IMG/VR virus record: IMGVR_UViG_3300042482_000702
Coordinates: 186,001 to 250,000 of that record
Strand: one strand, 5' to 3'
Length of the DNA: 64,000 bases
Positions 29,329 to 63,005 of this stretch are shown here, piece after piece. The position numbers and the translations under genes were made by a program. Positions within the stretch are counted from its first letter, which is position 1, and each line of letters starts with the position of its first letter. Below the pieces are notes generated by a model that saw only the letters and a list, made by a program, of their open reading frames with translations, had not been told where the DNA came from and made no database searches.

Positions 29329-29355
29329 ATAAATACTCTAAAACGAAGTATTTAT
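29329..29355. promoter_or_regulatory. Back-to-back TATTTAT motifs serving the divergent genes at 29318(-) and 29369(+)
   Basis: ataaata at 29329-29335 (minus strand) and tatttat at 29349-29355 (plus strand). Confidence 0.6.
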
Positions 29356-29368
29356 ATGAAAAAGTTAT

Positions 29369-30199
29369 ATGATAAATTTTAACACGGAGTACTTCAGTAA
29401 TAATTATTACTTCTTTTTAAAAGATAGGGGAGATAAAATATCCCTATATTATTCTGTTGCGGATACTTTAACCGAATCAAGAAAAAAAGATGAGAAGATT
29501 GACTTTGATAAAAAAGACACAAAAAAAATTAAAGATGTTATGTCTAAAGTTTTAAAGTCAAAGAAAAAAGTATCAAAAGACGATTTAACTAAAACTTTAA
29601 AAAATGTTAAATCCAAAACGGAAATAGAAGAATTTGTTGATGAAGATGGAACAATGTTAACATCTAGAATACCATATATTAATACAGCGCTATCTCCAAG
29701 AAAAACGATGGACCAGACTGTTCCTATGGCAAGAACAACTAACGACCCTGTTACTAGAGGTTATAGAGTTTATTATGGTGAGGGTGAAGAAAAGGGTGAT
29801 GAGATGATAAATGAGGTTGACTATTCAGAAGCATTTGGATATGTTGAAACTGAAAATATGGATTATGATAATACGGTTAAAACTCTCGCTAAAATGGGTG
29901 TTGAGAATCCTGAAGAAAGAGCTAAAGAATTTGGAAAACTTCCAAAACAAAAAAAACACGATGGTAAGTTAAAACAAAGATTATCAGAAAAAGATACAAT
30001 AGAAGAACAACAAAAACAACAAATGACTAAAATGGTTGAGGATATTTTAACCAAAAAATCAAAAAATGATTCTGAAGTTATTAAAAATAATGGTATCAGT
30101 AAAATATTAATGAAAAATATCCAATCTATTAAGAAAATCGCCGAAAAAGAAGGTATTAGTATTAATATGTTAATTAAATCACTAAAATCAAATGAATAA
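29369..30199 (+). CDS. Hypothetical protein (candidate head-internal protein)
   Basis: 276-aa charged ORF; LTES and INE motifs. Confidence 0.6.
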   Translation: MINFNTEYFSNNYYFFLKDRGDKISLYYSVADTLTESRKKDEKIDFDKKDTKKIKDVMSKVLKSKKKVSKDDLTKTLKNVKSKTEIEEFVDEDGTMLTSRIPYINTALSPRKTMDQTVPMARTTNDPVTRGYRVYYGEGEEKGDEMINEVDYSEAFGYVETENMDYDNTVKTLAKMGVENPEERAKEFGKLPKQKKHDGKLKQRLSEKDTIEEQQKQQMTKMVEDILTKKSKNDSEVIKNNGISKILMKNIQSIKKIAEKEGISINMLIKSLKSNE

Positions 30200-30662
30200 A
30201 GATTTATACGGAAAAACTTTTGTCATTCCTCAAGATGTTGTTGAGTATTTACATCAATGCAATCAAGCCGTTGGTGAAGTAGATGAAACAACCGAAGGAT
30301 TTAAAAGAAATAAAGATTTAAGAGACAAGAAAGAAGTTACATACCAACAATTAAAAAGAATGAAAAATTGGTTTGATAATTTTGATGGTCACGAAAATGA
30401 TACCACACATATTTTAAATGGTGGGCATTATGTAAAAAATTGGGTCAATGACACATTAAATTCAATGAGAGATAATGTTGAGAATACTAAACAAAACAAA
30501 TCTGAAGTATTACCAAATCAATTTATCCAACCTCACGAAAAAAATGATATGACCACAATGAATAGACCAAGTCAATCACATAAATCAGCGGTTAACAGAT
30601 ATGATTCAGCAATTGTTGAGAATTTACAAAGAATAAACGATTTAATAAAAAAAATAATTTAA
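30192..30662 (+). CDS. Hypothetical protein
   Basis: 156-aa ORF overlapping the previous stop; VTYQQLKRMKNWF...NGG..VKNWV. Confidence 0.6.
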   Translation: MNKDLYGKTFVIPQDVVEYLHQCNQAVGEVDETTEGFKRNKDLRDKKEVTYQQLKRMKNWFDNFDGHENDTTHILNGGHYVKNWVNDTLNSMRDNVENTKQNKSEVLPNQFIQPHEKNDMTTMNRPSQSHKSAVNRYDSAIVENLQRINDLIKKII

Positions 30663-30665
30663 GTT

Positions 30666-30959
30666 ATGGCAAATATAGACCCAACAGACTTAGCTCAACC
30701 AGACAATAAGTTGTCGTCAATTGCGACAGCTCAAAGAGCAATATTATTCCCAAAAAACGATTATAAAACAACCAACCAATATTCTTCGGTTAATCCTGAC
30801 GCATTGGCGGATGGTGATACTAAAGGTAAAGGAACCGGTGGAGATTTAGATGTTTATAATCAAGGAGCAGGAGCAATCCAAGACATTTTAGAAAGAAAAT
30901 CTGAAATAGTAGTGAATACCTTTAAACCAAACGCACCTTACACCACACCAAGCGCTTAA
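30666..30959 (+). CDS. Hypothetical protein
   Basis: 97-aa ORF, tightly packed in the operon. Confidence 0.6.
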   Translation: MANIDPTDLAQPDNKLSSIATAQRAILFPKNDYKTTNQYSSVNPDALADGDTKGKGTGGDLDVYNQGAGAIQDILERKSEIVVNTFKPNAPYTTPSA

Positions 30960-31375
30960 TGAAACTTTACAATACATTTAAGTCCCTTATTTTAGAAGTA
31001 GCGTCAGTTGACTCAATAGTCAGTGCTATAAAAAATAAAGACAAGATAATAATTTACTACGATGGTGATGAACCAGGTGGTCGTGGATTAAGGGAAATTG
31101 AACCTGTATGTTTCGGATACAGTAAAGCCGATAACCCTGTCCTACGAGCTTGGGATACTCAAGGAGCGTCTCACACCGGTTATAAAGGAGAACAACCCTT
31201 ACCAGGATGGAGACTTTTTAGAGCAGATAAAATTCTCTCTTTTAAACCATCCGGAGAAAAGTTTGACACACCAAAGCCCGGTTATAATACAGCCGGAGAT
31301 AAAAGTATGACAAGAGTTATCATAAATGCGGTTTTTAATGACCAACCAACTCAAACAGAACCAACACAATATTAA
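30959..31375 (+). CDS. WYL-domain protein
   Basis: I.YY.G......R.IEP...G......LRAW......WRLFR.DKI (WYL/SH3-like signature). Confidence 0.75.
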   Translation: MKLYNTFKSLILEVASVDSIVSAIKNKDKIIIYYDGDEPGGRGLREIEPVCFGYSKADNPVLRAWDTQGASHTGYKGEQPLPGWRLFRADKILSFKPSGEKFDTPKPGYNTAGDKSMTRVIINAVFNDQPTQTEPTQY

Positions 31376-31381
31376 AACATT

Positions 31382-31993
31382 ATGACAAACGAAAATAGTT
31401 TAATGGAAAAATTAATGATATCTAAAAAAATGATGGATATCCACAATCAAACACCAAGAGGGGGATTACCTTCTATGGATTCTTATAATTCACCAGAAGT
31501 TGCAACATACGACGCACCAAAAGCTAATTATGTTTTACCTCAAGAGTTTTTACAAGAAAACTCAACAACAAACGAACCTTATCTATCGTCAATCCCAAAA
31601 ACACCAACGACACAACAACCAATGACTCAAGATAGAGTTATGTCGTCTAAATTACCGGATGAGATAAAACGATTGATGATTGAACATCCAATTAATCAAC
31701 CAAATTCTATGGGGGGTGGTTCAGTATTGTCGGATGAATTAGTTGAGAAAGCATCTAAACTAATGAATTTAAAAGGCCCTCAACAACCAAAACAAATAGT
31801 TACAGAACAATCATCTCAACCAAATTTTAATAACAAACAATTAAAAGAAATGTTAAAAGAAGTTGTGGAAGAAGTATTATTAGAAAATGGTATATTAGCC
31901 GAGTCAACACAAAAATCAAACGAACTCTTTTCTTTTAAAGTTGGAAAGCATATATTTGAAGGTAAGGTCACAAAGATAAAAAAACTATCTTAA
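31382..31993 (+). CDS. Hypothetical protein (candidate head-internal protein)
   Basis: 203-aa low-complexity ORF with several (L/I/V)xE motifs. Confidence 0.6.
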   Translation: MTNENSLMEKLMISKKMMDIHNQTPRGGLPSMDSYNSPEVATYDAPKANYVLPQEFLQENSTTNEPYLSSIPKTPTTQQPMTQDRVMSSKLPDEIKRLMIEHPINQPNSMGGGSVLSDELVEKASKLMNLKGPQQPKQIVTEQSSQPNFNNKQLKEMLKEVVEEVLLENGILAESTQKSNELFSFKVGKHIFEGKVTKIKKLS

Positions 31994-32013
31994 CTTTATT
32001 TACTCTCAAGATT

Positions 32014-32044
32014 AACCCTCATCTACCAAGTTGGGGGTTTTTTT
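32014..32044 (+). terminator. Intrinsic terminator
   Basis: aaccctca...tgggggtt stem followed by a T run. Confidence 0.7.
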
Positions 32045-32056
32045 ATGGGACAATGG

Positions 32057-32085
32057 TTGATATTCTCATTAAGTATCGTTATATT
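32057..32085 (+). promoter_or_regulatory. sigma70-like promoter (TTGATA-17-TATATT)
   Basis: Follows the terminator, ~20 nt before the ATG at 32106. Confidence 0.45.
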
Positions 32086-32105
32086 TTCATTTATAATTTA
32101 ATAAT

Positions 32106-33323
32106 ATGAAAGAAAAAATTAATGTATTAGTTCTACCATCAGATACTTCAGGTGTTGGAAAATTTCGTTCGGTAGACCCTCATGTATTCTTACAAAACCA
32201 ATATCCTGATGATTTTCATGTGGATATAGATTATACCCCAAAGATAGATGATATTAATTATTGGAAAAAATATCAGATAATTCACGCTCATAGAACTATT
32301 GGTAATAACTACGAAGTGTCAGCACAAATAATTAAAGGATTAAAAGAATTAGGTATTATTGTCATTATTGATATCGATGATTATTGGTTACCAACAGTAG
32401 ACCATCCAATCCATAGTATTATCGTAAAACATAAAATTCACGAGAAAATTGTTGCAAACTTAAAAGAAGCCAGTTATGTTACAACGACAACTGATTTATT
32501 TGCAAACGAAATTCGTAAACTCAATAAAAATGTATTAGTTTTACCAAACGCTATAAATCCAAAAGAAGGTCAATTTAATCAACCAACACCACCGTCAGAA
32601 AAGATTAGAGTTGGATGGCTCGGAGGTAGTTCACACATTGAGGATTTAAATTTATTGGGGGATTTTGTTCAGAAAAATCAAGACATAAATGATAAATTAC
32701 AATATGTTATTTGTGGTTTTGATATTAGAGGTACCGTAACAGAACTTAACCCACAAACAGGTGAAGAAAGAAAAAGAGATATATTACCTCACGAAACTGT
32801 TTGGACTAAATATGAAGATATTTTCACTAACAAGTATAAAACCATAGATGAGAACTATAAAAAACATTTATTAGAGTTCAAAGAACGAGAATTCTTATCA
32901 ACAAGTGATTTGCCATATGTTAGAGTTTGGACAAAACCTGTTACAACTTATGCTATGAATTATTCAAAATTTGACATATCTTTGGCACCGATTAAAAATC
33001 ATATCTTCAATAGAATGAAATCTCAATTAAAAGTGATTGAGGCTGGGTTTTATAAGAAAGCGTTAATTGCGTCAGAAATTGGTCCTTACACGATTGATTT
33101 GAAACATTGTTTGAAAAATGGTAATTTCACAGATGGTAATGCAATTTTAATCCCTGAAAATAGAAATCATAGTGATTGGTCTAAATCAATTAAAAAGTTG
33201 GTTCAAAACCCTGAAATGATTACTGAATTGGGTGAACGATTATTTGAGACCGTTAAAGACAAATATGATTTAAAAAATGTTACAATTACAAGAGCAGAAT
33301 TTTACAAATCTTTAATTAAATAA
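32106..33323 (+). CDS. GT-B fold (GT4-like) glycosyltransferase
   Basis: SGVGKFRS..P, DIDDYW, LPNAI, VGWLGGSSH..DL, DISLAPI...FN.MKS.LK.IEAG. Confidence 0.8.
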   Translation: MKEKINVLVLPSDTSGVGKFRSVDPHVFLQNQYPDDFHVDIDYTPKIDDINYWKKYQIIHAHRTIGNNYEVSAQIIKGLKELGIIVIIDIDDYWLPTVDHPIHSIIVKHKIHEKIVANLKEASYVTTTTDLFANEIRKLNKNVLVLPNAINPKEGQFNQPTPPSEKIRVGWLGGSSHIEDLNLLGDFVQKNQDINDKLQYVICGFDIRGTVTELNPQTGEERKRDILPHETVWTKYEDIFTNKYKTIDENYKKHLLEFKEREFLSTSDLPYVRVWTKPVTTYAMNYSKFDISLAPIKNHIFNRMKSQLKVIEAGFYKKALIASEIGPYTIDLKHCLKNGNFTDGNAILIPENRNHSDWSKSIKKLVQNPEMITELGERLFETVKDKYDLKNVTITRAEFYKSLIK

Positions 33324-33327
33324 AAAA

Positions 33328-34029
33328 ATGATAAACATACCTTTAACCAAAATATTGTTTCTTGATATTGAGACAGTCGGTGGTTGCACAAACTATACAG
33401 AGTGTAAAGTTAATAATCCTAATGTTGCCAAACAATTTGAAAAGTATTTTGATTGGTTTCAAAAAAGATTTCCGGAAGATATTGGTCAGTCATTAGACTA
33501 TGTTTTTGAAAAACGAGCGGCTTTAGTTCCCGAGTTTTCAAAAATTGTTTGTGTTAGTGTAGCGTTTGTTATGGACAATGGGGATATTAAAAAACAATCA
33601 TTCTCCGGAGACGATGAAAAAAAATTACTAAAAGATTGTCAAACATTACTTAATCGTTGTGGTAAATTAGATTTTTATCTATGTGGACATAACTTAAAGA
33701 ATTTTGACATTCCGATGTTGGCAAAACGAATGATTATTAATGGTTTAAAACCATCATCAATTTTACCATCTTATAATACCAAACCTTGGGAGATTAAAGC
33801 GATTGACACCAAAGAAATTTGGCAATACGGAGCTTACACCGCAATTGGTTCCTTGGACTTAATGTGTTCTTGTATGGATGTTCCATCACCAAAGGAAGGT
33901 GATGTTACTGGAGATAAAGTTCACGACGCGTATTGGAATAAAAATATGTTACCAGAAATAACCGCTTATTGTGAACGAGATGTGTTGGTATTAATTGATG
34001 TAATAAAAAAATTAAAAGAGTTAGAATAA
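33328..34029 (+). CDS. DnaQ-like 3'-5' exonuclease (PolB-exonuclease-related family)
   Basis: LFLDIET (ExoI), GHNLKNFDIP (ExoII), YCERDV (ExoIII). Confidence 0.85.
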   Translation: MINIPLTKILFLDIETVGGCTNYTECKVNNPNVAKQFEKYFDWFQKRFPEDIGQSLDYVFEKRAALVPEFSKIVCVSVAFVMDNGDIKKQSFSGDDEKKLLKDCQTLLNRCGKLDFYLCGHNLKNFDIPMLAKRMIINGLKPSSILPSYNTKPWEIKAIDTKEIWQYGAYTAIGSLDLMCSCMDVPSPKEGDVTGDKVHDAYWNKNMLPEITAYCERDVLVLIDVIKKLKELE

Positions 34030-34625
34030 TGGAATATAATAATTTAGATTTTTTAGAGGAAAAGGCTAAAGAATTAAGACAAAGATTAGAGGGTGATTTC
34101 GAAGATTTAGATATGACCGAAATGATGAATGAATTGGGTGTTGATATTAAAGATTTAGAGGATAAAATGTTAAATCATAGAACTAAACTACCTTTACAAT
34201 TTAATAAATTACATCCCGACGCAACAACACCAAAATATAATTACGAAGGAGATTCAGGGTTTGATTTACATTCTATTGATGAGATAATCATACCCCCATT
34301 TGGAAGAGCATTAGTCCCTACTGGATTATCTTTTGATATTAAAGATGGGTATGAAATTCAAGTTAGAACCAAAAGTGGTTTAGCCATTAATCAGGGTCTT
34401 ATGATATTAAATTCTCCCGGAACAGTTGATTCGTCATACACTGGAGAAATAAAGGGGATTATTTTTAATACTAACCCTTTTGAATTTACAATACCTAAAG
34501 GTATGAAAATAGGTCAAGCTGTCTTATGTCCCGTTGTAAATGGGGGGTGGGTTGACTTGGTAGAAGTTAATAAAATAAACGAAAAAGATAGAGGTGAAAA
34601 TGGATTTGGAAGTACAGGGATATAA
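34029..34625 (+). CDS. dut: Trimeric dUTPase with N-terminal extension
   Basis: GDSGFDL, RTKSGLA, NSPGTVDSSYTGE, IGQAV, RGENGFGSTG (motifs I-V). Confidence 0.95.
   Translation: MEYNNLDFLEEKAKELRQRLEGDFEDLDMTEMMNELGVDIKDLEDKMLNHRTKLPLQFNKLHPDATTPKYNYEGDSGFDLHSIDEIIIPPFGRALVPTGLSFDIKDGYEIQVRTKSGLAINQGLMILNSPGTVDSSYTGEIKGIIFNTNPFEFTIPKGMKIGQAVLCPVVNGGWVDLVEVNKINEKDRGENGFGSTGI
34577..34607 (+). repeat. 31-bp exact direct repeat, copy 1
   Basis: aaacgaaaaagatagaggtgaaaatggattt. Confidence 0.95.
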
Positions 34626-35232
34626 CTCAATAGATTTAAAAGTGGTAATGAGACCTTATGAGTCAGAACATGAATTAAGATTGTTTTGTCAAGAATTAAA
34701 AAAAACATTAGGAGATTCTCCGACAATTGTTGAACTTGGTTCATATATGGGTGAAAGTAGTTTAATTTTTTCTCAAGAATTCCCTAATGGGAAAATTATA
34801 TGTATAGATTCGTGGGAAGGTGGGTTTGACGATTCCGATTCCGCTAGTCACGCCGATTATATTGATGTTGAAGAACAGTTTGATTTAAGATTATCATCTG
34901 TTAATAACATTACAAAATTAAAAGGATATTCGACAGATTTCACAATCGAATGTGATATGGTTTATATCGACGCTTGTCATAAATATGAGTGTGTTATGAA
35001 CGATATTAAACATTGGGGACCATTAACCACGAAAGTAATTTCCGGTCACGATTATAATACAGATGAATTTATTAGGATTCATCCACATATTGCAGGGGTT
35101 AAAGTTGCAATAAATGAATCTTTAGGGATTCCGGATAAAATATTTGGTGATGGGTCATGGTTTAAAATAATATTTAATAAAAACGAAAAAGATAGAGGTG
35201 AAAATGGATTTAGTTCAACAAAATTGTTTTAA
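34594..35232 (+). CDS. Class I SAM-dependent methyltransferase (Methyltransf_24-like); start probably ATG 34600 or 34648
   Basis: VELGSYMGES, CIDSW, DMVYIDACHKY, ISGHDY. Confidence 0.85.
   Translation: MKMDLEVQGYNSIDLKVVMRPYESEHELRLFCQELKKTLGDSPTIVELGSYMGESSLIFSQEFPNGKIICIDSWEGGFDDSDSASHADYIDVEEQFDLRLSSVNNITKLKGYSTDFTIECDMVYIDACHKYECVMNDIKHWGPLTTKVISGHDYNTDEFIRIHPHIAGVKVAINESLGIPDKIFGDGSWFKIIFNKNEKDRGENGFSSTKLF
35181..35211 (+). repeat. 31-bp exact direct repeat, copy 2
   Basis: aaacgaaaaagatagaggtgaaaatggattt. Confidence 0.95.
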
Positions 35233-42304: not shown

Positions 42305-43117
42305 ATGGAAGAAACTAAAACATTTGACGTATCCGTAATATTACCAATAAAATCAGGTAAAACATTAGGATTTACAGAGTATTTTGAAAAATGTGTAAAA
42401 TCATTACAAAATCAAAAAGTGGAAATAAACGAACTAATAATTGTTCATACTAACGAAAGTTATTTGGTTGATTATTTAAACGAGTTTGACTTCGGAAGTT
42501 TAACTGTTAAGAAATACGAATGGACTAAAGACCCTAACTACGCTGACCAAATAAATTACGGGGTTAGAAATTCAAATTCAGAATGGGTTTCATTATTTGA
42601 ATTTGATGATGAATATTCAAGTATTTGGTTTAAAAATGTTGACTTATATAGTGGTGTGTATCCTGATGTAAACGCGTTTTTACCAATTGTTGTTGATACA
42701 GATGAATCAGGTAAATTTGCCGGATTCACTAATGAAGCGACTTTTGCTGCCAATTTTACTGAAGAAATGGGTGTATTAACTAATGAAACATTACTTGACT
42801 ATCAGAATTTTCAAACGTCAGGTATGGTTATTAAAAAATCGTCATTCCTTGATTTTGGATTAATTAAATCATCATTTAAATTAACCTTTGGTTACGAATT
42901 CTTTTTAAGAATGACACATAACTCGGTAAAAATTATATCAATTCCTAAAATAGGTTATAAGCATACAAATTTAAGACAAGGGTCCATTTTTTGGAATTAT
43001 AAAAATGGTGAAAATGTTTTAACTGACGATGAAGTTAAGTTTTGGATTGAATCGGCAAAAAAAGAATATTTGTTTATTAATGACAGAAACATAAAATACG
43101 AACCTCAAGAAGTTTAA
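42305..43117 (+). CDS. GT2 (GT-A) glycosyltransferase
   Basis: VSVILPI, QINYGV, WVSLFEFDDEY, EFFLRM. Confidence 0.75.
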   Translation: MEETKTFDVSVILPIKSGKTLGFTEYFEKCVKSLQNQKVEINELIIVHTNESYLVDYLNEFDFGSLTVKKYEWTKDPNYADQINYGVRNSNSEWVSLFEFDDEYSSIWFKNVDLYSGVYPDVNAFLPIVVDTDESGKFAGFTNEATFAANFTEEMGVLTNETLLDYQNFQTSGMVIKKSSFLDFGLIKSSFKLTFGYEFFLRMTHNSVKIISIPKIGYKHTNLRQGSIFWNYKNGENVLTDDEVKFWIESAKKEYLFINDRNIKYEPQEV

Positions 43118-43866
43118 TGAGTGAAATAGTTAATTTAACAGGAGATACCGTTGTTGAGTTAAAAAAGAAAGGTAGAAAACCAACTCAATTAAATTATTTT
43201 GATGTTCGGGAAGAATTAGCGGTTGTTAGGTTTCTAGCAACCGAAAATTATGAAGAAAGAAATAAAATTTATAATGAGTTTTTAAAACAACCTTTAGATA
43301 AGATGATATCTTCGATTATTCGTCGATATAAATTATATAGAAAAGACATGGATTTCACCGAAATTCACGTAGATACTCATTCATTTTTAATGACCAAGAT
43401 AGAAAAATTTAAACCTTCTAGAGAAAAGAAGGCATATTCTTATTTTGGTACCATATGTAAAAATTATTTAATGGGTCAAATCATTAAAGACCAAAAAGAA
43501 ACAAATAGAAAAATTTCATACGAGGATATTTCAACCAGCATCGAAAATAATGAAATGTTTTCATATAGTATAGAAAACGATGGATTAGACCCCGAAAGAG
43601 TTATTAGACATTTTTTATTAGAGTTAGAAAAATTTATTAAAGATGGTAATCTTTCAGAAAATGAAATTAAATTAGGTCATGCGTTATACGAAATATTCGA
43701 GAATTACGATAAAATTTTTGTAGGAAACGATAATAATAAATTTAATAAAAACATTATTTTATTATCGTTACGAGAGATGACAAACTTAACAACAAAAGAA
43801 ATTAGAGGGTCTATGAAAAAATTTAAAAATATGTATTTGGTGTTAATTCAAAATATGGTTAAATAA
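43117..43866 (+). CDS. Putative late-transcription sigma factor (T4 gp55-like, sigma region 2)
   Basis: KMISSIIRRY...KIEKFKP...KAYSYFGTICKNYL resembles the gp55-type F.P....(N/K)(P/A)(F/Y)(A/S)YF..I region. Confidence 0.6.
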   Translation: MSEIVNLTGDTVVELKKKGRKPTQLNYFDVREELAVVRFLATENYEERNKIYNEFLKQPLDKMISSIIRRYKLYRKDMDFTEIHVDTHSFLMTKIEKFKPSREKKAYSYFGTICKNYLMGQIIKDQKETNRKISYEDISTSIENNEMFSYSIENDGLDPERVIRHFLLELEKFIKDGNLSENEIKLGHALYEIFENYDKIFVGNDNNKFNKNIILLSLREMTNLTTKEIRGSMKKFKNMYLVLIQNMVK

Positions 43867-43880
43867 ATTACACACTTAAA

Positions 43881-43887
43881 TATTTAT
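43881..43887 (+). promoter_or_regulatory. TATTTAT putative late promoter
   Basis: 4 nt before the ATG at 43892. Confidence 0.55.
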
Positions 43888-47990: not shown

Positions 47991-48002
47991 TATTTATAAA
48001 TA
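47991..48002 (+). promoter_or_regulatory. TATTTATAAATA putative late promoter
   Basis: Palindrome 10 nt before the ATG at 48013. Confidence 0.6.
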
Positions 48003-49493: not shown

Positions 49494-49505
49494 TATTTAT
49501 AAATA
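49494..49505 (+). promoter_or_regulatory. TATTTATAAATA putative late promoter
   Basis: Palindrome 7 nt before the ATG at 49513. Confidence 0.6.
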
Positions 49506-50287: not shown

Positions 50288-50295
50288 TATCTTTG
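50288..50295 (+). promoter_or_regulatory. Bacteroidota-type -7 promoter element TAnnTTTG
   Basis: TATCTTTG 19 nt before the ATG at 50315. Confidence 0.5.
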
Positions 50296-50314
50296 TAGAA
50301 TAAAATAAATAGAA

Positions 50315-51233: not shown

Positions 51234-51265
51234 AGTATAATTATAAATATCTTATATAATTAAAT

Positions 51266-52176: not shown

Positions 52177-52232
52177 ATAATATAAATATACAACAATCAT
52201 ACCAAAAAACCTATTATTCAAAATAAAGATAT

Positions 52233-55647: not shown

Positions 55648-55720
55648 ATAAATATATGATATTATGAAAAAAGCACATTTGTACTAATATTCACAACATC
55701 TTTTTATTTATTAATAAATA
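55648..55720 (-). promoter_or_regulatory. Two TATTTAT motifs upstream of the scaffold-MCP operon
   Basis: ataaata at 55648-55654; palindrome tatttattaataaata at 55705-55720. Confidence 0.55.
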
Positions 55721-56739: not shown

Positions 56740-56750
56740 TTTGAATGTTT

Positions 56751-56762
56751 TATTTATAAATA
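56751..56762 (-). promoter_or_regulatory. TATTTATAAATA putative late promoter
   Basis: Palindrome 11 nt before the ATG at 56739. Confidence 0.6.
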
Positions 56763-57233: not shown

Positions 57234-57265
57234 TAATTTCCATATTTTCTCGTTTATTTTTTAAA

Positions 57266-57294: not shown

Positions 57295-57327
57295 AACTTT
57301 TTGAAAAGATGGGGATATATGTATTAT

Positions 57328-57522: not shown

Positions 57523-58238
57523 AGAGTTTCGTTTAAACTTTTAAGTTTAAAATAAGTTAGTTTGTCGTATTTCTCAGATATTACCTTGGATAAGGTATCA
57601 TTGATTCTGCTATTAACTGAACTATCATCGGAGGTAGATTTCATTTTAGTTAATTTACTAACAACACTTTCTTTAATCACATTAAAATCTTCGTTAAGAG
57701 TACTATCATCTTCAGATAGTAATTTAAACAATTCGTCTTTATCTGATTCGTTTAAAGATTCAATGTAATTACTAATTGTTTGATTTGCAATACTAACCAT
57801 CGCTTTTAAAGGTATGTTAACACTTTCAGTTTTAGTGATAGGTAATTTTCTTAAAGTTTCTGAAATAATTTTTTTACTTTTAATTCTTGATTCGATTGTT
57901 AGAACATCTCTTGAAAATAATTTATCAATATTATCGTATGAGTCATTTGATTTAGAATCTTTAACCCATTCGTTTAATTTTTTAATTTCTGATGTAGATA
58001 TTTTGTTTACAGTGTTTTCATATATAGTGATACATTCGTTAATGTAATCACTCACATATGATTCCGACAATGCTTTCGGTGAATTTAATTCATCGTACAT
58101 ATAGAAAATTTTACTGATGTTTTTATTCTCTAACACCAATTTTTTAAAATTTTTTATTTCTTGTTTAAATGTTCCGTTATTATATGATTCTAATAACACA
58201 TTTTCTATTTTCGATTTTAATATACCAAACTTTGTCAT
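57519..58238 (-). CDS. Hypothetical helical protein downstream of portal (likely start 58238, MTKFG)
   Basis: Helical ORF with LLES, LSES, LNES, IKES; TATTTAT at 58254-58260 upstream. Confidence 0.65.
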   Translation of the reverse strand: MTKFGILKSKIENVLLESYNNGTFKQEIKNFKKLVLENKNISKIFYMYDELNSPKALSESYVSDYINECITIYENTVNKISTSEIKKLNEWVKDSKSNDSYDNIDKLFSRDVLTIESRIKSKKIISETLRKLPITKTESVNIPLKAMVSIANQTISNYIESLNESDKDELFKLLSEDDSTLNEDFNVIKESVVSKLTKMKSTSDDSSVNSRINDTLSKVISEKYDKLTYFKLKSLNETL

Positions 58239-58260
58239 TTTTCTTTTTTTATTATAAATA

Positions 58261-60126
58261 TCAATCATTTAGAAGTTTATTCAATTCAGTCTCAATATCT
58301 CCTAAAGAATTTCTAGATTTAGATAAATCAATATAAGAATCGTCATCGGTCATATTACCACTTTCCAATAAAATATTCCAATTTTCTTTTCTTTTAAATG
58401 ATTCTGGTGTTAGTTCACCTTCACCACCTGCTTCTGGTGCTGGTGGGAGTTCTTCACCTCCTAATGCAGGTTCTCCACCCAATTCTGATTCACCTCCAAA
58501 ATCACCTCCACCAAAACTTCCTCCACCGCCCGGTGGTGGTGGTGCTGGAACTTCAGCTGATTGTGTTGTTCCTGATTTACTACCATATAACTTATCAATA
58601 TTATCAAATATACCTGTGTGAGAAATTATTGTTGCTGTGTTAGTTAATTCAGCCCCAACAGCTTTTTCTATTCTTTGTTGTTGTAAATCTAATTTAATTT
58701 CATCATCAGAGAATCCTAATACGTGTTTTTTAGCCCAAGTAACAGATACAGGTGCAATACCTTCTATCGCCGTTACGGCATCTTTATACAATAATATTTT
58801 TTCTTTCCAAACATCAATTTTTAATAAATCTGCTTGGGTTGATGGATTAGTTAAACTTAATCTAAAGTTGGATAATTCATCTTCAAACCCTAATAAAAAT
58901 AAATGAACAATTGCTATTTTATTTAATTCGGCAATCATACATTTTTGTATTCTATTGATAGTTCTTGCAAAACGAATATCTTGTAATGATAAGTTTTTAC
59001 CATCTCCAACAGTTTCTTCAAATCCTAAAAATGCTTTAGGAACTCTAAGAGCTGTTAGTAATTTCTTTTGGATATATTCTATATCGGCAATTTCCGCCAA
59101 ATTCTGTGCTCCTGGTAATGTTTCTATTGGAGATGTCGCTGCTGGGTCACGAACAGGTATAAAATAATCTTGGTCAACAGCCATTTGATTAAATCTCATA
59201 TCCACATTTCCAGTTTTAGAATCAACAACTTGGTCTCTTTTAAATTTATTAGCAACTCTTTGTACGTATGGTTCAACATCTTTATCATCCATATTACCAA
59301 CAAACACTTTAAAAACTCTTCTTTCAGGTGCTCGCGATGTTCTATAAATTAACATTGCATCTTCAGATAATAATAATTGCTTCCAAATACGACGAGCCTT
59401 TTCTAACATAGAAGTACCATAAGGAAGTTTTCTATCATCACCTAATAATCTAAAATGAGCGACTTCCCAAGAGTTAAACTCCATATCTTTAGCTTTCCAC
59501 TTAAATCGTAATCCTTTGTTTTCTGCAGGTTCATCAACATTTGCCGATTTTGCTGCCATACCTCTTTCTAATCTCTCAATTTCTATGTTTGGTAATTGCA
59601 TACAACCAACAATTCCTTTTTCGGCGTCAAGTTTTAAATACACAAAATTATCACCATATTTACAAGTATTTCTTGTCCACATTGGTAAATTGGTGTTAAG
59701 GTCTAAAACATTATTAAATAAATCTGAAATAATTCCTTTTATCCTTTTTGACTCTGAATAAATTTGTAACATATGACCATTTTGGTCAACTGTGGTAGAT
59801 TCTTCACCATAGATATCTAAAGCTGCCGAAATTTCCGGTGTATATTCCATACTCTCATAATCATAAAATGATGCTAAACGAGTTGGTTCATAATAAACCG
59901 CTTGAGTGTATAAATTACTTTCAATTTTTGTCCACTGATTGGCTAGATAATATGTTTGTTGTGCCTGAAGTTTTTCTCGTTCATATTCGGCTTGGGAAGT
60001 AGTTTTTAATAATTCTTTTTTATCTAACTTATATGTTGGATAATCTTGATTTAAAAGAGCATTTGGACCAAAAGCTCTGGATAATCTTTGCCAAACAGTT
60101 AAGTCGTTATTTTGATTGTTTTCCAT
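58261..60126 (-). CDS. Portal protein (T4 gp20-like)
   Basis: Y..ME..PEI..ALDI..EE, HFRL, YG.S.LE.AR..W.QL.L.EDAM.IYR..RAPERRVF...VGN, DYFIP.R, IETLPGA.NL.EI.DIEY..KKL..AL.VP. Confidence 0.95.
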   Translation of the reverse strand: MENNQNNDLTVWQRLSRAFGPNALLNQDYPTYKLDKKELLKTTSQAEYEREKLQAQQTYYLANQWTKIESNLYTQAVYYEPTRLASFYDYESMEYTPEISAALDIYGEESTTVDQNGHMLQIYSESKRIKGIISDLFNNVLDLNTNLPMWTRNTCKYGDNFVYLKLDAEKGIVGCMQLPNIEIERLERGMAAKSANVDEPAENKGLRFKWKAKDMEFNSWEVAHFRLLGDDRKLPYGTSMLEKARRIWKQLLLSEDAMLIYRTSRAPERRVFKVFVGNMDDKDVEPYVQRVANKFKRDQVVDSKTGNVDMRFNQMAVDQDYFIPVRDPAATSPIETLPGAQNLAEIADIEYIQKKLLTALRVPKAFLGFEETVGDGKNLSLQDIRFARTINRIQKCMIAELNKIAIVHLFLLGFEDELSNFRLSLTNPSTQADLLKIDVWKEKILLYKDAVTAIEGIAPVSVTWAKKHVLGFSDDEIKLDLQQQRIEKAVGAELTNTATIISHTGIFDNIDKLYGSKSGTTQSAEVPAPPPPGGGGSFGGGDFGGESELGGEPALGGEELPPAPEAGGEGELTPESFKRKENWNILLESGNMTDDDSYIDLSKSRNSLGDIETELNKLLND

Positions 60127-60241
60127 CTTAATAATTTAAATATTTTTTTTTATTAATAAATAGTTTATAAGTTGGATTAAACTTGGTGGTTATTATTGTT
60201 ATCTACCATATTAAAATAATTATAGTTAATCATATATATTA

Positions 60242-62308
60242 TTAATAAGTTTTATTTAGTATAAAGATATCACTATAGATGTTGTTTCCTGTAGATGCAG
60301 CACCCCATTCAGCTGTAACATTTAATGTATTACTGATTGTTGTATCGAATGTTGTGTTATTCAATACGTTAAATCCGAATCCTTGGACAGAAGCATTGTT
60401 AGTTTTTGTGTAATGGAAACTACCTAAAGAAACAATTGATGCTACAGTAGTAGTTCCAACTTGTCTAATTGTAAAATCAACATTTAAAGACCACACATCG
60501 TCTACAACACTGCTTCCAAGAGATTGTACACCACTATCTAAAAGAATTGTAGACCCTGTTCTCATTCTAATTATAATAGTTTGATTATTGTTTGCATTCA
60601 TAACACCACCAAAAACTGCTCTAAAACTATCTCCAACACTAAAACCATTAGCAGGTACACTTAATGTACCAACTCCTGTACCAATTAAAGTTGATTCAGT
60701 TATTGTATCGCTCACAATAGTACTGTTAGCTGTTTGTACATATAGTCCATATACTAATGGTGCTGGAAAAACTGGTGAAGTACCACTAGAACCTGAAGAA
60801 CCACTCGTTCCCGAAGAACCGCTAGTTCCTGATGAACCATCAATCCCCGCAATTGCCGGTGATAATGTTGTTGTTACTTGTCCGATACTTGCATCGTTAA
60901 AGTACATTGTAAGTACTTTAGTGTAAGGTGAATTAATAGCTATACCATATAATTCTATAAGAATTCTATCTGACGGTACAATATTAGATGCCGGAATAGG
61001 TATTGACCATAGTTTTAAAGTAGGGACAAGGTAATTATCTATCGGGACAGGAATAGGTGTAGTTGTAGATAACAATGTAGTTGTTCCACCAGTATGATAC
61101 GCATATACTCTTGCATATATTCCGTGGTCAGCGTTTACTGCCGTAGTATTAACGTATAATTCAAAATTCCAATTTCCACCCACAATATTACTAATATTGG
61201 GGTCATTATTAGGTGTTATAAATGTCCCAAATAATTGTGCTGTTGTTCCTGATAATGTTTGAGATAAAGATGTTTGTCCGCTAATACTAATTACCCGGTT
61301 TAAATCATAATATGATGCACTTCCATCACCTTGGTTAGGTGTATCTCTATTGAAGTAATAAACTAACCCTGTTGAAAATCCGTTAATACCGCTTGTTCCT
61401 GATGAACCGCTTGGTCCCATAGAACCTGAATTCCCATTTACCCCACTCGTTCCCGATGAACCACTTGTTCCGCTTGAACCATTGGCCCCTGATGTTCCCG
61501 ATGAACCACTTGTTCCGCTTGAACCATTTCCACCTGCAGCACCTCCTAAATTAACGAGCCAAGATGAATAATTCCCCGAACCTACTATATTACTAATATC
61601 AACAACCATATCACCATTTGACGGGTTATAACTAACAACCATACCAATCATATGGTTTGAGAGGTCATAGGCTATAATTACGTCTTGAGCAATACTATAC
61701 CCTAAGTTAGTCCCAACAACAAAAGTCCCTGTACTTCCTGTTTGGATTGTTAAAGGTGTCGAAGATGTTGTTCTATATAAATCACCTGAAAAACCACTAG
61801 AACCTGATGAACCACTTGTTCCTGATGAACCTGATGTTCCACTTGAGCCGCTAGTCCCTGAAGTACCGTTAGTACCAACACATATTCCATTATCTATAAT
61901 GGTTGCGCCACCATCCGCAAATATCTCACCTGACATATAACAATCTGTATATGTCATTCCAGCACTTACCGTACCAATTTGAATGATGTAATTACAAGTT
62001 GTTCCTGTATAATTTATGGTGGTAATACCACCACTATTATCAATCGTATAACTTTTACAAGTTTGACCATTTATTCCCGATGTTCCACTAGTTCCCGATG
62101 TTCCACTAGTTCCTGATTCACCACTAGTTCCTGATTCACCACTTGTTCCCGATGAACCGCTAGCTCCCGAAAATTGTTGAGTTAAGGCTGAAAAATAAAT
62201 TGAATTGGTTTCTCCTGACGGGATAACATCGTAGTTTACAATAACCATCAACGAGTCTGATTGACCGGATGATACTAATGGTAATTGTGATATAGGTAAA
62301 TTAGGCAT
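60242..62308 (-). CDS. Fibre-like protein with Gly-X-Y Ser/Thr tracts; shares a globular domain with the 1856-aa fibre
   Basis: MPNLPISQLP start; four GTSGSS tracts; G.S.G.(I/V).YFN...FIT...P.DR(M/I).(V/I)..Y domain. Confidence 0.7.
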   Translation of the reverse strand: MPNLPISQLPLVSSGQSDSLMVIVNYDVIPSGETNSIYFSALTQQFSGASGSSGTSGESGTSGESGTSGTSGTSGTSGINGQTCKSYTIDNSGGITTINYTGTTCNYIIQIGTVSAGMTYTDCYMSGEIFADGGATIIDNGICVGTNGTSGTSGSSGTSGSSGTSGSSGSSGFSGDLYRTTSSTPLTIQTGSTGTFVVGTNLGYSIAQDVIIAYDLSNHMIGMVVSYNPSNGDMVVDISNIVGSGNYSSWLVNLGGAAGGNGSSGTSGSSGTSGANGSSGTSGSSGTSGVNGNSGSMGPSGSSGTSGINGFSTGLVYYFNRDTPNQGDGSASYYDLNRVISISGQTSLSQTLSGTTAQLFGTFITPNNDPNISNIVGGNWNFELYVNTTAVNADHGIYARVYAYHTGGTTTLLSTTTPIPVPIDNYLVPTLKLWSIPIPASNIVPSDRILIELYGIAINSPYTKVLTMYFNDASIGQVTTTLSPAIAGIDGSSGTSGSSGTSGSSGSSGTSPVFPAPLVYGLYVQTANSTIVSDTITESTLIGTGVGTLSVPANGFSVGDSFRAVFGGVMNANNNQTIIIRMRTGSTILLDSGVQSLGSSVVDDVWSLNVDFTIRQVGTTTVASIVSLGSFHYTKTNNASVQGFGFNVLNNTTFDTTISNTLNVTAEWGAASTGNNIYSDIFILNKTY

Positions 62309-62310
62309 AG

Positions 62311-62985
62311 TTAATTGATTAGAATTTTATTATTATTTTCTTGGTCTAATGTAAAATAATTCTCTTGTAATAAATAGTTTGTATCTTCAATTTGTGTGGG
62401 TGTGGGTGTGGGTGTTGGTGTTGGTGTTGGTGTTTCAGTATTTGTCGGAGTAGGAGTATTAGTTGGTGTTTGGGTGTTTGTCGGAGTAGGAGTATTAGTT
62501 GGTGTTTGAGTGTTTGTTGGTGTTTGAGTAGGCGTATTAGTTGGTGTTGGCGTATTAGTAGGCGTTGGTGGTGGTGGTAAATAACTTAAAACACAAGTCT
62601 TATTTAATTCAGTGATACATATAACATATTGACCATAATAATATTCTGTATAATATACATAGGGTAATACTACAGAACCTAAATCTATTGTACCTCCTGT
62701 TAGAGGGTTATAGGTTATATTTCCGCAATATCCGCTGTAATTATTTGTCGATATTGTAAATTTAGGTGTAGGAATTAATTCAAAACTACCAGTAAAATCA
62801 CAATCAATTATAAATGCCGGTGTTGGTGTTACCGGAATTTTACGGTAAGAATCATTATCTTGTTTACTACTTAATTTATTAAAACCTGGTGGGATAACCT
62901 GAACATTAAAGATATTTTGTCCATCAACAACTAGTCGTGAACCCCCAATAATATTCCCTGATTTTTTTCTATTAACAAATCCCAT
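62311..62985 (-). CDS. Virion protein with Thr-Pro tract and C-terminal YLLQE..LDQE motif
   Basis: (TPTNTP/TQTP)n; domain paralogous to 23813-24832; TATTTAT at 62999-63005 upstream. Confidence 0.65.
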   Translation of the reverse strand: MGFVNRKKSGNIIGGSRLVVDGQNIFNVQVIPPGFNKLSSKQDNDSYRKIPVTPTPAFIIDCDFTGSFELIPTPKFTISTNNYSGYCGNITYNPLTGGTIDLGSVVLPYVYYTEYYYGQYVICITELNKTCVLSYLPPPPTPTNTPTPTNTPTQTPTNTQTPTNTPTPTNTQTPTNTPTPTNTETPTPTPTPTPTPTQIEDTNYLLQENYFTLDQENNNKILIN

Positions 62986-63005
62986 CTTCTTTTAATTAAT
63001 AAATA

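What the first reader, a model, noticed from the sequence alone, without database searches (positions are those of the whole stretch)
29329..63005. Late-promoter motif TATTTAT is the reverse complement of the T4 late promoter core
TATTTAT lies on the coding strand shortly upstream of at least 14 structural-type starts: 5937, 8334, 25432, 29329, 29349, 43881, 47991, 49494, 51243, 52182, 55648, 56751, 58254, 60156 and 62999. It flips with gene orientation, including back-to-back copies at the 29.3-kb divergence. Genes starting at 8403, 32106, 50315 and 57233 have TTGAC/TAnnTTTG-type elements instead. T4 gp55 reads TATAAATA; here the sense is inverted, and four sites are the palindrome TATTTATAAATA, which satisfies both. 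The gp55-like ORF at 43117 is the candidate reader. Several copies lie only 4-11 nt from the ATG, implying nearly leaderless late mRNAs. High AT content raises chance matches.
Basis: partly seen in the sequence, partly recalled or inferred. Interest (0 to 1): 0.62.

Follow-up and report, generated by a model that had tools for sequence, protein, structure and literature searches.

The report
Conserved TATTTAT promoter of T4-like phages
The 7-base word TATTTAT in front of many genes of this 322-kb T4-like jumbo phage is a real, evolutionarily conserved promoter-like signal. It is most likely read by a phage-encoded sigma factor distantly related to T4 gp55, and it often sits so close to the start codon that the mRNAs would have almost no leader.

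Summary
All 15 listed sites exist, on the coding strand of the gene downstream.

- **Enrichment.** The window-wide count (60) equals chance, but position is far from chance. In the window, 12 of 54 genes carry sense TATTTAT within 40 nt of the start, against 2.1±1.35 in shuffles. In the whole 322-kb genome the count is 86 against 15.5±3.8.
- **Specificity.** Single-mismatch variants, the antisense word and T4's TATAAATA are not enriched.
- **Conservation.** The word is invariant at three orthologous intergenic sites in 58-80 related contigs while the flanks drift.
- **Promoter signs.** Ten copies follow an intrinsic terminator directly. No -35 element accompanies it. Spacing to the ATG is bimodal, at 4 nt and 13-15 nt.
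- **The phage.** It is T4-like (Gp23, Gp20, prohead protease) with Bacteroidota-type host promoters.
ORF 43117 is a sigma-70-family protein. Its region 2 aligns with the gp55 family (hhalign 86%), and it carries an extra, possibly sigma4-like, C-terminal domain.
- **Cultured relatives.** Flavobacterium phage immuto and Microcystis phage Mel-JY01 have this sigma family, no canonical sigma, and the same enrichment.

"Inverted T4 motif" is only a formal description: read in the same direction, the two words share 6 of 8 bases. This is a new variant of a known kind. No transcription start sites were mapped.

The parts
43117..43866 (+). Divergent sigma-70-family factor, 249 aa: a gp55-related region 2 plus an extra C-terminal domain. 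Candidate reader of TATTTAT.
   Evidence: Sequence: Sigma70_r2 scores 13.2 bits on this protein alone, and 54 of 79 family members hit Sigma70_r2, best E 4e-7. Structure: AF2 pLDDT 90.6; the top 50 VIA-align rows are all sigma factors, with residues 25-132 on sigma2 at Z about 9 and rmsd 2.3-3.3. gp55 link: hhalign against the gp55 family gives probability 86%, E 4.9e-6. C-terminal domain alone: best matches are sigma region 4, Z 5-6, which is weak.
43881..43887 (+). TATTTAT, 4 nt before the ATG of 43892-44272 (126 aa). Leaderless-type site.
   Evidence: ATATTTAT is invariant in all 80 related loci (32 distinct sequences) while the flanks are 30-70% conserved. Spacing to the ATG stays 4-6 nt.
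47991..48002 (+). TATTTAT within the palindrome TATTTATAAATA, 15 nt before the ATG of 48013-49488 (491 aa).
   Evidence: The word is exact in 79 of 79 loci. The T and AAAA at positions +10 to +14 are also at least 90% conserved, while +7 to +9 vary.
49494..49505 (+). TATTTAT (palindromic copy), 12 nt before the ATG of 49513-49878.
   Evidence: Conserved in the 6 loci that hold this gene.
29349..29355 (+). TATTTAT, 13 nt before 29369-30199. This is the first gene of the + strand sugar-modification operon that ends with the sigma gene.
   Evidence: Pfam finds a methyltransferase, glycosyltransferases and an epimerase in 35198-42303.
29329..29335 (-). TATTTAT, 10 nt before 25560-29318 (1252 aa, DUF285 fibre-like). 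Back-to-back with the copy at 29349.
25432..25443 (-). TATTTAT (palindromic copy), 15 nt before 24843-25421 (192 aa).
8334..8340 (-). TATTTAT, 4 nt before the ATG of 5990-8329 (779 aa). Leaderless-type site.
5937..5943 (-). TATTTAT, 70 nt upstream of 2699-5866 (1055 aa, Laminin_G_3). Uncertain member.
   Evidence: The distance is atypical.
51243..51249 (-). TATTTAT, 9 nt before 50712-51233 (173 aa).
   Evidence: Exact in 18 of 19 distinct orthologous sequences (59 loci). In many relatives the ATG is 6 nt away.
52182..52188 (-). TATTTAT, 5 nt before an in-frame ATG at 52176. It follows a terminator-like hairpin with a T-run and implies the gene is 51487-52176, not 51487-52221.
55648..55654 (-). 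TATTTAT, 22 nt before 54171-55625 (484 aa, in the scaffold position). The Gp23 capsid gene 52282-54138 follows without a copy of its own.
   Evidence: Gp23 scores 249 bits.
56751..56762 (-). TATTTAT (palindromic copy), 16 nt before the prohead protease gene 56014-56739.
   Evidence: Peptidase_S77 scores 85 bits.
58254..58260 (-). TATTTAT, 15 nt before an in-frame ATG at 58238. This implies the gene is 57519-58238, starting after the portal gene's stop.
60156..60162 (-). TATTTAT, 29 nt before the T4-type portal gene 58261-60126.
   Evidence: Portal_T4 scores 259 bits.
62999..63005 (-). TATTTAT, 13 nt before 62311-62985 (224 aa).
50289..50296 (+). Host-type (Bacteroidota) -7 box TATCTTTG, 19 nt before 50315-50725. 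An example of the second promoter class; coordinates derived from the upstream print.
   Evidence: The same class precedes the tRNA clusters and 10 genes at exactly 4 nt from the ATG elsewhere in the genome.

Best explanation
TATTTAT (extended consensus a-TATTTAT-A-A-n-T-A-A-A) is the -10-like core of a promoter class that has no -35 element. The class belongs to a lineage of T4-superfamily phages. That lineage includes this 322-kb freshwater jumbo phage of a Bacteroidota-type host, Flavobacterium phage immuto and Microcystis phage Mel-JY01.

The host RNA polymerase core most likely reads it when loaded with the phage sigma encoded at 43117-43866. That protein has a gp55-related sigma region 2 fused to an additional, possibly sigma4-like, C-terminal domain. 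Like T4 gp55, it would recognise the word on the non-template strand.

Initiation is inferred at the conserved purine five bases after the word, which places the word at about -11 to -5. This is the same geometry as the host -7 box TAnnTTTG. Where the word lies exactly 4 nt before the ATG (19 genes genome-wide), the transcript would begin at the A of AUG and be leaderless. Where it lies 13-15 nt away, a short A-rich leader results.

The class heads morphogenesis operons (portal, prohead protease, scaffold-position gene plus capsid, sheath, fibres) and many genes of unknown function. Host-type TTTG/TAnnTTTG promoters drive tRNAs, chaperones and small early-looking genes instead, and are probably served by the host sigma A or the phage's own sigma-A-like factor.

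Shown: enrichment, orientation, specificity, conservation, terminator adjacency, the sigma fold, and co-occurrence of sigma and motif. Inferred: promoter function, the sigma-motif pairing, the start position, and late timing.
For: 1. Positional enrichment and orientation. All seven bases matter.
2. The word is invariant at three orthologous spacers across 58-80 contigs while the flanks drift, and T-A at +10/+11 is also conserved.
3. Ten motif genes have a GC hairpin with a T-run 0-8 nt upstream of the word. In five of these the ATG is 0-4 nt after it, which leaves no other room for a promoter.
4. No -35-like column appears upstream.
5. The host-type TAnnTTTG box shows the same sharp peak at 4 nt before the ATG in 10 genes. 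Its 3' end is known to lie at -5, with 4-5 nt to the start site.
6. Mel-JY01 uses Shine-Dalgarno sequences (29% of genes against 3-4% in the other two). There the word sits a median 34 nt upstream with GGAG-like sequences in between, so it is not a ribosome signal.
7. ORF 43117 is a sigma. Its profile aligns to the gp55 family at 86% probability, and gp55 F86 and Y97 match conserved F and Y109.
8. immuto and Mel-JY01 each hold exactly one member of this sigma family and no canonical sigma. Both show the same enrichment: 32 against 7.0±2.4, and 26 against 7.9±2.7.
9. The phage's second sigma keeps host-type region 2.4 and 4.2 residues, so it is the natural reader of TAnnTTTG rather than TATTTAT.
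10. T4-type head genes carry the word.
Against: - No transcription start site, timing or binding data exist. The one metatranscriptome run holds only assembled contigs, and one of them runs across the 47991 site.
- The sigma-motif link is correlative and rests on three lineages.
- A relative with a 40%-identical sigma on a 53% GC contig (L128) has no TATTTAT and shows an AAACGAC-like word instead.
- The motif also precedes a DnaB-like helicase and a superoxide-dismutase-domain gene, so 'late' may be too narrow.
- The direct gp55 HMM does not hit the protein. The sigma4 assignment of the C-terminal domain is weak, at Z 5-6.
- No gp33 or gp45 homologue was found, so the way the promoter is activated may differ from T4.
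- About 15 of the 86 genome-wide copies are expected by chance.
Confidence: 0.62

Rival explanations
1. TATTTAT is a variant -7/-10 box read by the host primary sigma, or by the jumbo phage's own sigma-A-like factor (G000 96026-96889), perhaps helped by a phage activator. On this reading the ORF 43117 family reads something else.
For: - The word occupies the same place relative to the ATG as the host TAnnTTTG box.
- It shares the TA and a T-run with that box.
- This phage does encode a sigma-A-like protein.
- L128 has the ORF 43117-type sigma but no TATTTAT.
Against: - The same word is enriched in phages of a Flavobacterium and of a cyanobacterium, whose primary sigmas read very different boxes.
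- immuto and Mel-JY01 have no sigma-A-like gene.
- The sigma-A-like protein keeps host-type DNA-reading residues.
- tRNA clusters and chaperone genes use TAnnTTTG, never TATTTAT.
- The G of TAnnTTTG is nearly invariant in Flavobacterium and is absent here.
Confidence: 0.17
2. The word acts at the RNA level, as a translation-initiation enhancer or an RNA-processing site in polycistronic transcripts, and not as a promoter.
For: - It lies very close to start codons, at 4 and 13-15 nt.
- The hosts lack Shine-Dalgarno sequences.
- Many copies sit between co-directional genes.
Against: - Bimodal spacing is unlike a ribosome-binding signal.
- Copies sit directly after intrinsic terminators.
- In the Shine-Dalgarno-using Mel-JY01 the word moves to about 34 nt upstream, with a separate GGAG between it and the ATG.
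- At 4-nt spacing a U-rich 7-mer would lie where no known bacterial enhancer acts.
Confidence: 0.06
3. A phage-encoded RNA polymerase too divergent to detect reads the word, as in phiKZ- or AR9-type jumbo phages.
For: The genome is a 322-kb jumbo phage with many unannotated giant proteins. Short AT-rich promoters without a -35 element are typical of such enzymes (own knowledge).
Against: - There is no match to Rpb2_6 or Rpb1_2 in six frames.
- The phage is T4-like, and that lineage uses the host polymerase.
- The 160-kb immuto and 190-kb Mel-JY01 share the motif and encode the sigma family instead.
Confidence: 0.05
4. The pattern is a chance by-product of AT-rich intergenic DNA.
For: The whole-window count equals the shuffle expectation, and the genome is 31.5% GC.
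Against: - The positional count lies about 18 standard deviations above dinucleotide shuffles of the same upstream stretches.
- There is a strand bias against composition.
- Mismatch variants are not enriched.
- The word is perfectly conserved in diverged orthologous spacers.
Confidence: 0.01

Closest known systems
Phage T4 late promoters (TATAAATA) read by gp55, with gp33 and the gp45 sliding clamp
   Same: - A T4-superfamily phage: Gp23, Gp20 and prohead protease in T4 order.
- A short AT-rich -10-like word with no -35 element, in front of head and tail genes.
- A small divergent phage sigma whose region 2 aligns with gp55, including the aromatic residues that hold the flipped base.
   Different: - The core is TATTTAT(A), not TATAAATA, with T,T instead of A,A at positions 4 and 5. 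The T4 word is not enriched.
- The inferred position is -11 to -5 rather than -13 to -6.
- The sigma is 249 aa with an added C-terminal domain.
- No gp33 or gp45 homologue was detected.
- Many sites imply leaderless mRNAs.
Bacteroidota primary-sigma promoters (-33 TTTG / -7 TAnnTTTG)
   Same: Same distance logic: a sharp peak at 4 nt between the box and the ATG. Both classes coexist in this genome.
   Different: - Different word: no G at -5, and the T-run is shifted.
- No -33 element.
- It serves other genes.
- It is also present in a cyanobacterial phage.
Flavobacterium phage vB_FspM_immuto and Microcystis phage Mel-JY01 (cultured T4-like phages)
   Same: - Portal 35-41% identical.
- One member each of the ORF 43117 sigma family.
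- Sense TATTTAT enriched upstream of the terminase, portal, fibre and other genes. The immuto portal site reads TATTTATAAATAAAAC, as in this window.
   Different: - Genomes of 160-190 kb rather than 322 kb, with no sigma-A-like gene.
- Mel-JY01 has long leaders with Shine-Dalgarno sequences.
- No paper in the searched library describes their promoters.
Leaderless mRNAs of bacteria
   Same: The promoter box is placed so that the start site coincides with the A of AUG.
   Different: - The frequency is unusual. About 30% of TATTTAT sites (26 of 86) and 14 of 51 TAnnTTTG sites lie 3-6 nt from the ATG. By comparison, about 5.5% of mRNAs are leaderless in Flavobacterium psychrophilum.
- Not verified by RNA data.

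Membership tests
T4-type late transcription system (gp55 / TATAAATA) | Promoter consists of a -10-like element only, with no -35 element | tested here: met
   No informative column from -50 to -2 relative to the word in 82 sites. There is only a weak AT-rich patch at -14 to -17 and an A at -1.
T4-type late transcription system (gp55 / TATAAATA) | Consensus TATAAATA on the non-template strand | tested here: not met
   The enriched word is TATTTAT. ATAAATA/TATAAATA in the sense direction are at or near background here (43 against 28±5, 9 of them from palindromes) and in immuto and Mel-JY01.
T4-type late transcription system (gp55 / TATAAATA) | gp55-type sigma: region 2 homology domain only, about 185 aa, with a C-terminal clamp-binding tail | tested here: inconclusive
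   Profile-profile match to the gp55 family has probability 86%, E 4.9e-6, over 90 columns. However, the protein is 249 aa with an extra helical domain, a gp55 HMM gives no direct hit, and PHROGs gives none.
T4-type late transcription system (gp55 / TATAAATA) | gp33 co-activator present | tested here: inconclusive
   Only the conserved neighbour 43892-44272 was tested. hhalign against T4 gp33 gives probability 0.2%, and there is no PDB match to gp33. The rest of the genome was not searched for gp33.
T4-type late transcription system (gp55 / TATAAATA) | gp45-type sliding clamp present | tested here: inconclusive
   No match to gp45-slide_C or DNA_PPF. T4 gp45 gives only a spurious 12-bit hit. 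A divergent clamp could have been missed.
T4-type late transcription system (gp55 / TATAAATA) | Drives virion and morphogenesis genes late in infection | tested here: inconclusive
   The word precedes the portal, prohead protease, scaffold-position gene (with Gp23 downstream), sheath and fibre-like giants. It also precedes a DnaB-like helicase and a superoxide-dismutase-domain gene. Timing cannot be read from sequence.
Sigma-70 family | Region 2 domain (core binding and -10 recognition) | tested here: met
   54 of 79 family members hit Pfam Sigma70_r2. The profile hits SigA at E 0.003. The model aligns to sigma2 domains at Z about 9, rmsd 2.3-3.3 Å over 82-100 residues, and all top 50 rows are sigma factors.
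Sigma-70 family | Region 4 helix-turn-helix | tested here: inconclusive
   The C-terminal 98 residues were modelled alone (pLDDT 88.6). The best matches are sigma-H, sigma-E region 4 and SigA region 4, but at Z 5.0-6.1, which is within the noise band for helical domains. There is no sequence hit.
Sigma-70 family | Binds RNA polymerase core and directs initiation | not testable with these tools
   Needs biochemistry.
Bacteroidota sigma-A promoter (-33/-7) | TAnnTTTG box at -12 to -5 | tested here: not met
   TATTTAT sites lack it. Exact TAnnTTTG boxes form a separate set: 51 sense copies, including those before the tRNA clusters.
T4 superfamily phage | Gp23 capsid, Gp20 portal and Gp21-type prohead protease in conserved order | tested here: met
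   Pfam Gp23 249 bits, Portal_T4 259 bits, Peptidase_S77 85 bits, at 52282-60126 on the minus strand.
Leaderless mRNA | 5' end of the transcript at or within a few bases of the AUG | not testable with these tools
   Only the geometry is available: 19 genes at exactly 4 nt, terminators directly upstream, and the analogy with TAnnTTTG-N4-ATG. The reads held are contigs.

The most novel reading that the evidence does not exclude
A very large, so far unannotated family of phage sigma factors (over 1,100 clusters at 50% identity, labelled 'hypothetical' or 'SprT-family metalloprotease' in public sources) joins a gp55-like region 2 to a sigma4-like domain in one chain. The family defines its own -35-less promoter word, TATTTAT, across T4-superfamily phages of Bacteroidota and cyanobacteria. 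In the phages of Bacteroidota that promoter is positioned to produce leaderless mRNAs on a scale not seen in their hosts. It could represent the undivided form of the gp55 + gp33 arrangement of T4.
Probability: 0.3. Interest if true: 0.72.

Novelty: new variant of a known kind. Interest (0 to 1): 0.55.

Why it matters
T4 late transcription is a textbook case, and its TATAAATA/gp55 pair is regarded as conserved across T4-like phages. A widespread environmental branch uses a different, very sharply defined word. The sigma family behind it has thousands of metagenomic members on roughly 320-kb contigs, and the protein has a different architecture from gp55.

The result gives a concrete rule for annotating promoters, operons and start codons in these genomes; two start codons in this window are already corrected by it. 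It gives a function to a large family of 'hypothetical' proteins. It also points to leaderless translation as a common route of phage gene expression in hosts without Shine-Dalgarno sequences.

Two cultured phages share the system, so all of this can be tested at the bench.

Tried and rejected
- **PHROGs.** A scan of ten window proteins, including ORF 43117, gave nothing.
- **Megablast.** 20 kb of the window against GenBank phages gave nothing. tblastn of ORF 43117 found only LR756508 at E 2e-4, and the 491-aa protein found nothing.
- **Phage RNA polymerase.** Rpb2_6 and Rpb1_2 are absent.
- **T4 proteins searched directly in the genome.** gp55 gave no hit and gp45 gave only a spurious 12-bit hit. 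The gp45 Pfam families are absent.
- **The gene next to the sigma (43892-44272) as a gp33 analogue.** No support.
- **RNA evidence.** One metatranscriptome run was found, kept only as contigs. It was laid on 6,000 bases. It shows that relatives are present but gives no ends, no strand and no start sites.
- **More distant relatives.** A profile search for distant loci in IMG/VR failed for lack of a conserved stretch.
- **C-terminal domain.** Sequence search against the PDB gave nothing. Foldseek on the domain gave nothing significant.
- **Literature.** No description of a TATTTAT late promoter, of immuto promoters or of Mel-JY01 was found in the searched library.
- **Not done.** Complex prediction was not used, because no binding claim is made. 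No other genetic code was needed.

Full report
**Context.** The window is bases 186001-250000 of a 322,477-bp IMG/VR virus record that CheckV rates complete. GC content is 31.5%, and my simple ORF caller found 375 ATG-started ORFs. Pfam shows a T4-superfamily phage. On the minus strand, in T4 order, lie the Gp23 capsid gene (52282-54138, 249 bits), a prohead protease (56014-56739) and a T4-type portal (58261-60126). A tail sheath, a baseplate J protein, a family B DNA polymerase, ribonucleotide reductase, a DnaB-like helicase, DnaK and ClpB lie elsewhere in the genome. Bases 1-29,000 of the window hold collagen-like, LRR, DUF285 and lectin-type giants that look like fibres. The stretch 29369-43117 is a plus-strand block of sugar, methyl and glycosyl transferases.

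**The host looks like a member of the Bacteroidota.**
- Shine-Dalgarno-like 4-mers precede only 3% of genes.
- The classical -33/-7 promoter (TTTG ... TAnnTTTG) precedes the tRNA clusters and many small genes.
- A phage-encoded sigma-A-like protein is 38-48% identical to primary sigmas of the FCB group.
- The nearest cultured relative by portal, apart from a Microcystis phage, infects a Flavobacterium.

**Checking the observation.** All listed coordinates are exact TATTTAT words on the strand of the gene downstream. Position and orientation, however, are far from chance.
- In the window, 12 of 54 genes have the sense word within 40 nt of the start, against 2.10±1.35 (maximum 8 of 1000 shuffles of those same stretches).
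- Genome-wide the count is 86 copies before 80 genes against 15.5±3.8 (maximum 30 of 300). The antisense word gives 43 against 28.0±5.2.
- 134 of all 325 copies lie in the 8.7% of the genome that is intergenic.
- In spacers between co-directional genes the sense word outnumbers the antisense word 65 to 28, and 8 of those are palindromes. The binomial p is 3e-5, although that strand is richer in A than in T.
- Convergent spacers hold 3 copies in 2.9 kb.
- None of the 21 single-mismatch variants is enriched in the sense direction, so all seven bases count.
The motif therefore corrects those starts.

**Anatomy of the signal.**
- The consensus is A at -1 (65%), then the word, then A and A at +7 and +8 (about 60-70%).
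- In sites at least 9 nt from the ATG, T or A follows at +10 and A at +11 to +13 (about 80%).
- Nothing resembling a -35 or -33 element appears between -50 and -2.
- The distance from the word to the ATG is bimodal: exactly 4 nt in 19 genes (plus 7 at 5-6 nt), and 13-15 nt in 22 genes.
- Ten motif genes have a GC-rich hairpin with a T-run on the same strand, ending 0-8 nt before the word in eight of them (29 and 55 nt in the other two). In five of the ten the ATG follows the word by 0-4 nt. After a terminator a new start of transcription is needed, and the word is all that lies between.

**Conservation.** I fetched 80 IMG/VR loci whose ORF 43117 orthologues are 76-98% identical.
- In the spacer after that gene, ATATTTAT is invariant in all 80 loci (32 distinct sequences). 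The upstream spacer changes in sequence and length, and the four bases before the ATG vary.
- The same holds before the 491-aa gene at 48013, in 79 of 79 loci. There +7 to +9 vary, while T at +10 and AAAA at +11 to +14 are at least 90% conserved.
- It also holds before 50712, in 18 of 19 distinct sequences.
- Spacers before genes that lack the word (39621, 44279) show no such block.

**Promoter or RNA signal.** Three arguments favour a promoter.
1. Copies sit directly after terminators, as described above.
2. The host-type box TAnnTTTG shows the same sharp peak at exactly 4 nt before the ATG, in 10 genes. In Flavobacterium this box occupies -12 to -5 with 4-5 nt to the start site. That arrangement puts the start at the A of AUG, and the identical spacing suggests the 3' end of TATTTAT also lies at -5.
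3. Microcystis phage Mel-JY01 carries Shine-Dalgarno-like 4-mers before 29% of its genes (4% in a control window). There the word is still enriched but lies a median 34 nt upstream, with GGAG-type sequences between it and the ATG. The median is 14 nt here and 18 nt in immuto. A translation signal would not move away from the ATG and leave room for a separate ribosome site.

**Who reads it.** No multisubunit RNA polymerase was detected in six frames. Two sigma genes were found.

The first, G000 96026-96889, has regions 1.2, 2 and 4. It keeps the region 2.3-2.4 and 4.2 residues of FCB-group primary sigmas almost unchanged while lacking region 3. It is the natural reader of TAnnTTTG.

- Alone it scores only 13 bits on Sigma70_r2 and has no PHROG or Pfam family.
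- It belongs to a huge family: about 8,000 close proteins, many on roughly 320-kb contigs, and 1,116 clusters at 50% identity.
- 54 of 79 diverse members hit Sigma70_r2.
- Against the PDB the family profile finds cyanobacterial SigA (E 0.003) and T4 gp55 (E 0.14).
- The AlphaFold model is confident (pLDDT 90.6), and all of its best structural matches are sigma factors. Residues 25-132 lie on sigma region 2 at Z about 9 and rmsd 2.3-3.3 Å.
- Profile-profile comparison with a 32-member gp55 alignment gives 86% probability (E 4.9e-6) over 90 columns. gp55 F86 and Y97, which form the pockets for the flipped bases, match a conserved F and the nearly invariant Y109.
- The match to the phage's own sigma-A-like protein is much weaker, at E 0.19.
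- A gp55 HMM finds no other candidate in this genome, in immuto or in Mel-JY01. The family HMM finds exactly one gene in each.

The protein is not a plain gp55. It is 249 aa, and its last roughly 100 residues form a separate helical domain whose best matches are sigma region 4, though only at Z 5-6. No gp33-like protein was found; I tested only the conserved neighbour. No gp45-type clamp was found either.

**Co-occurrence.**
- Flavobacterium phage immuto (160 kb) and Microcystis phage Mel-JY01 (190 kb) have portals 35-41% identical to this one.
- Each encodes one member of the sigma family (E 5e-35 and 1.3e-29) and no canonical sigma.
- In both, sense TATTTAT is enriched upstream of ORFs: 32 against 7.0±2.4, and 26 against 7.9±2.7. 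The antisense word and T4's TATAAATA are at background.
- In immuto the word precedes the terminase (after a terminator), the portal (TATTTATAAATAAAAC, the same extended form as in this window), a fibre gene and the gene after the sigma gene.
- More distant members also have the word nearby: L130 (35% identity) and L132 (30% identity, on a 284-kb contig).
- L128 (40% identity, 53% GC) does not. It shows an AAACGAC-like word before its genes instead. This remains unexplained and keeps the pairing an inference.

**Which genes carry the word.**
- With the word: the portal, the prohead protease, the scaffold-position gene (with the capsid gene behind it), the sheath, several fibre-like giants and many genes of unknown function.
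- Also with the word: the first gene of the sugar-modification operon that ends in the sigma gene, a DnaB-like helicase and a superoxide-dismutase-domain gene.
- With host-type boxes instead: tRNAs, DnaK, ClpB, a GIY-YIG gene and many small ORFs.

'Late' is therefore plausible for most sites but not shown, and about 15 copies are expected by chance.

**The 'reverse complement of T4' idea.** TATTTATA is indeed the reverse complement of TATAAATA. Read in the same direction, though, the two words agree at six of eight positions and differ only in the middle pair. gp55 reads the non-template strand and flips out the bases at -12, -9 and -8. A related sigma reading TATTTAT on the same strand needs only altered pockets, not an inverted complex. 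The four palindromes arise because the preferred downstream sequence begins AAATAAAA. Their other orientation points into the end of an upstream gene, and the T4-type word is not enriched.

**RNA data.** One metatranscriptome run holds relatives of this stretch, but only as assembled contigs. They give no ends or strands, and a 2.5-kb contig crosses the 47991 site, which proves nothing either way.

**Verdict.**
- The best explanation is a -35-less promoter class read by a gp55-related phage sigma with the host polymerase, placed so that many transcripts are leaderless or nearly so.
- My confidence is high that the word is a promoter element (about 0.85) and moderate for the sigma pairing (about 0.65). 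Late timing is open.
- It is a new variant of the T4 late-transcription theme rather than a new kind of system.

Noticed in passing
G000 96026-96889 (-), outside the window (locus L003:1081-1941): The phage encodes a second sigma, like the primary sigma of the FCB group, with regions 1.2, 2 and 4. It keeps host-type DNA-reading residues but lacks region 3. It is 66-68% identical to genes on short contigs binned into 'Dehalococcoidales' and 'Flavobacterium' MAGs, which are probably phage contamination of those bins.
   Followed up: partly
G000 264045-293929 (-), outside the window: 22 tRNA genes, mostly in clusters. Several clusters are preceded by Bacteroidota-type promoters (TTTG ... TAYCTTTG) and none by TATTTAT.
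   Followed up: partly
Genome-wide, e.g. G000 16461, 17480, 35862-36368, 262930, 294953: Ten genes have the host-type box TAnnTTTG exactly 4 nt before the ATG. By the known geometry this means leaderless mRNAs. A 53% GC relative (L128) shows the same arrangement with 5 nt. Such an arrangement is far more frequent here than reported for Flavobacterium hosts.
   Followed up: partly
L128/L129 (ENA contigs of 61-94 kb, 53.5% GC): A relative with a 40%-identical sigma has no TATTTAT. It has an AAACGAC-like word 6-12 nt before many start codons. This may be a changed promoter word or a different signal.
   Followed up: no
window 29369-43117 (+), with L128 and L132: A block of glycosyl and methyl transferases and an epimerase lies directly upstream of the sigma gene. 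Glycosyltransferases keep this position in relatives whose sigma is only 30-40% identical. This may relate to virion or DNA glycosylation.
   Followed up: no
window 18225-23795 (-), 60242-62308 (-); G000 70077-77468 (-): Giant collagen-repeat proteins (1856, 688 and 2463 aa), alongside BspA-type LRR, DUF285, Fib_succ_major and Laminin_G_3 giants. These are probably fibres or head decorations.
   Followed up: no
G000 311009-312883 (-) and 256566-258617 (+): The phage encodes full-length DnaK (HSP70, 841 bits) and a ClpB-like AAA+ protein. Both have TAnnTTTG boxes upstream, at 96 and 56 nt.
   Followed up: no
window 43117-43866 and its family: JGI sources name many members of this sigma family 'predicted SprT family Zn-dependent metalloprotease'. 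Nothing in the sequence or the model supports that name.
   Followed up: partly
window 34571-34599 and 35175-35203 (+): Two neighbouring ORFs with GTG starts are preceded by the same roughly 22-base sequence ending in GATAGAG-GTGAAA. This may be a local duplication or a shared signal.
   Followed up: no
G000 94628-95689 (-): A 353-aa protein with a membrane-like N-terminus and a long acidic tandem repeat (EEPIEE / EEVVEEP units).
   Followed up: no
window 49881-49895: Three overlapping antisense copies (ATAAATAAATAAATA on the + strand) sit before 49906. They are a simple repeat rather than oriented promoter words.
   Followed up: no
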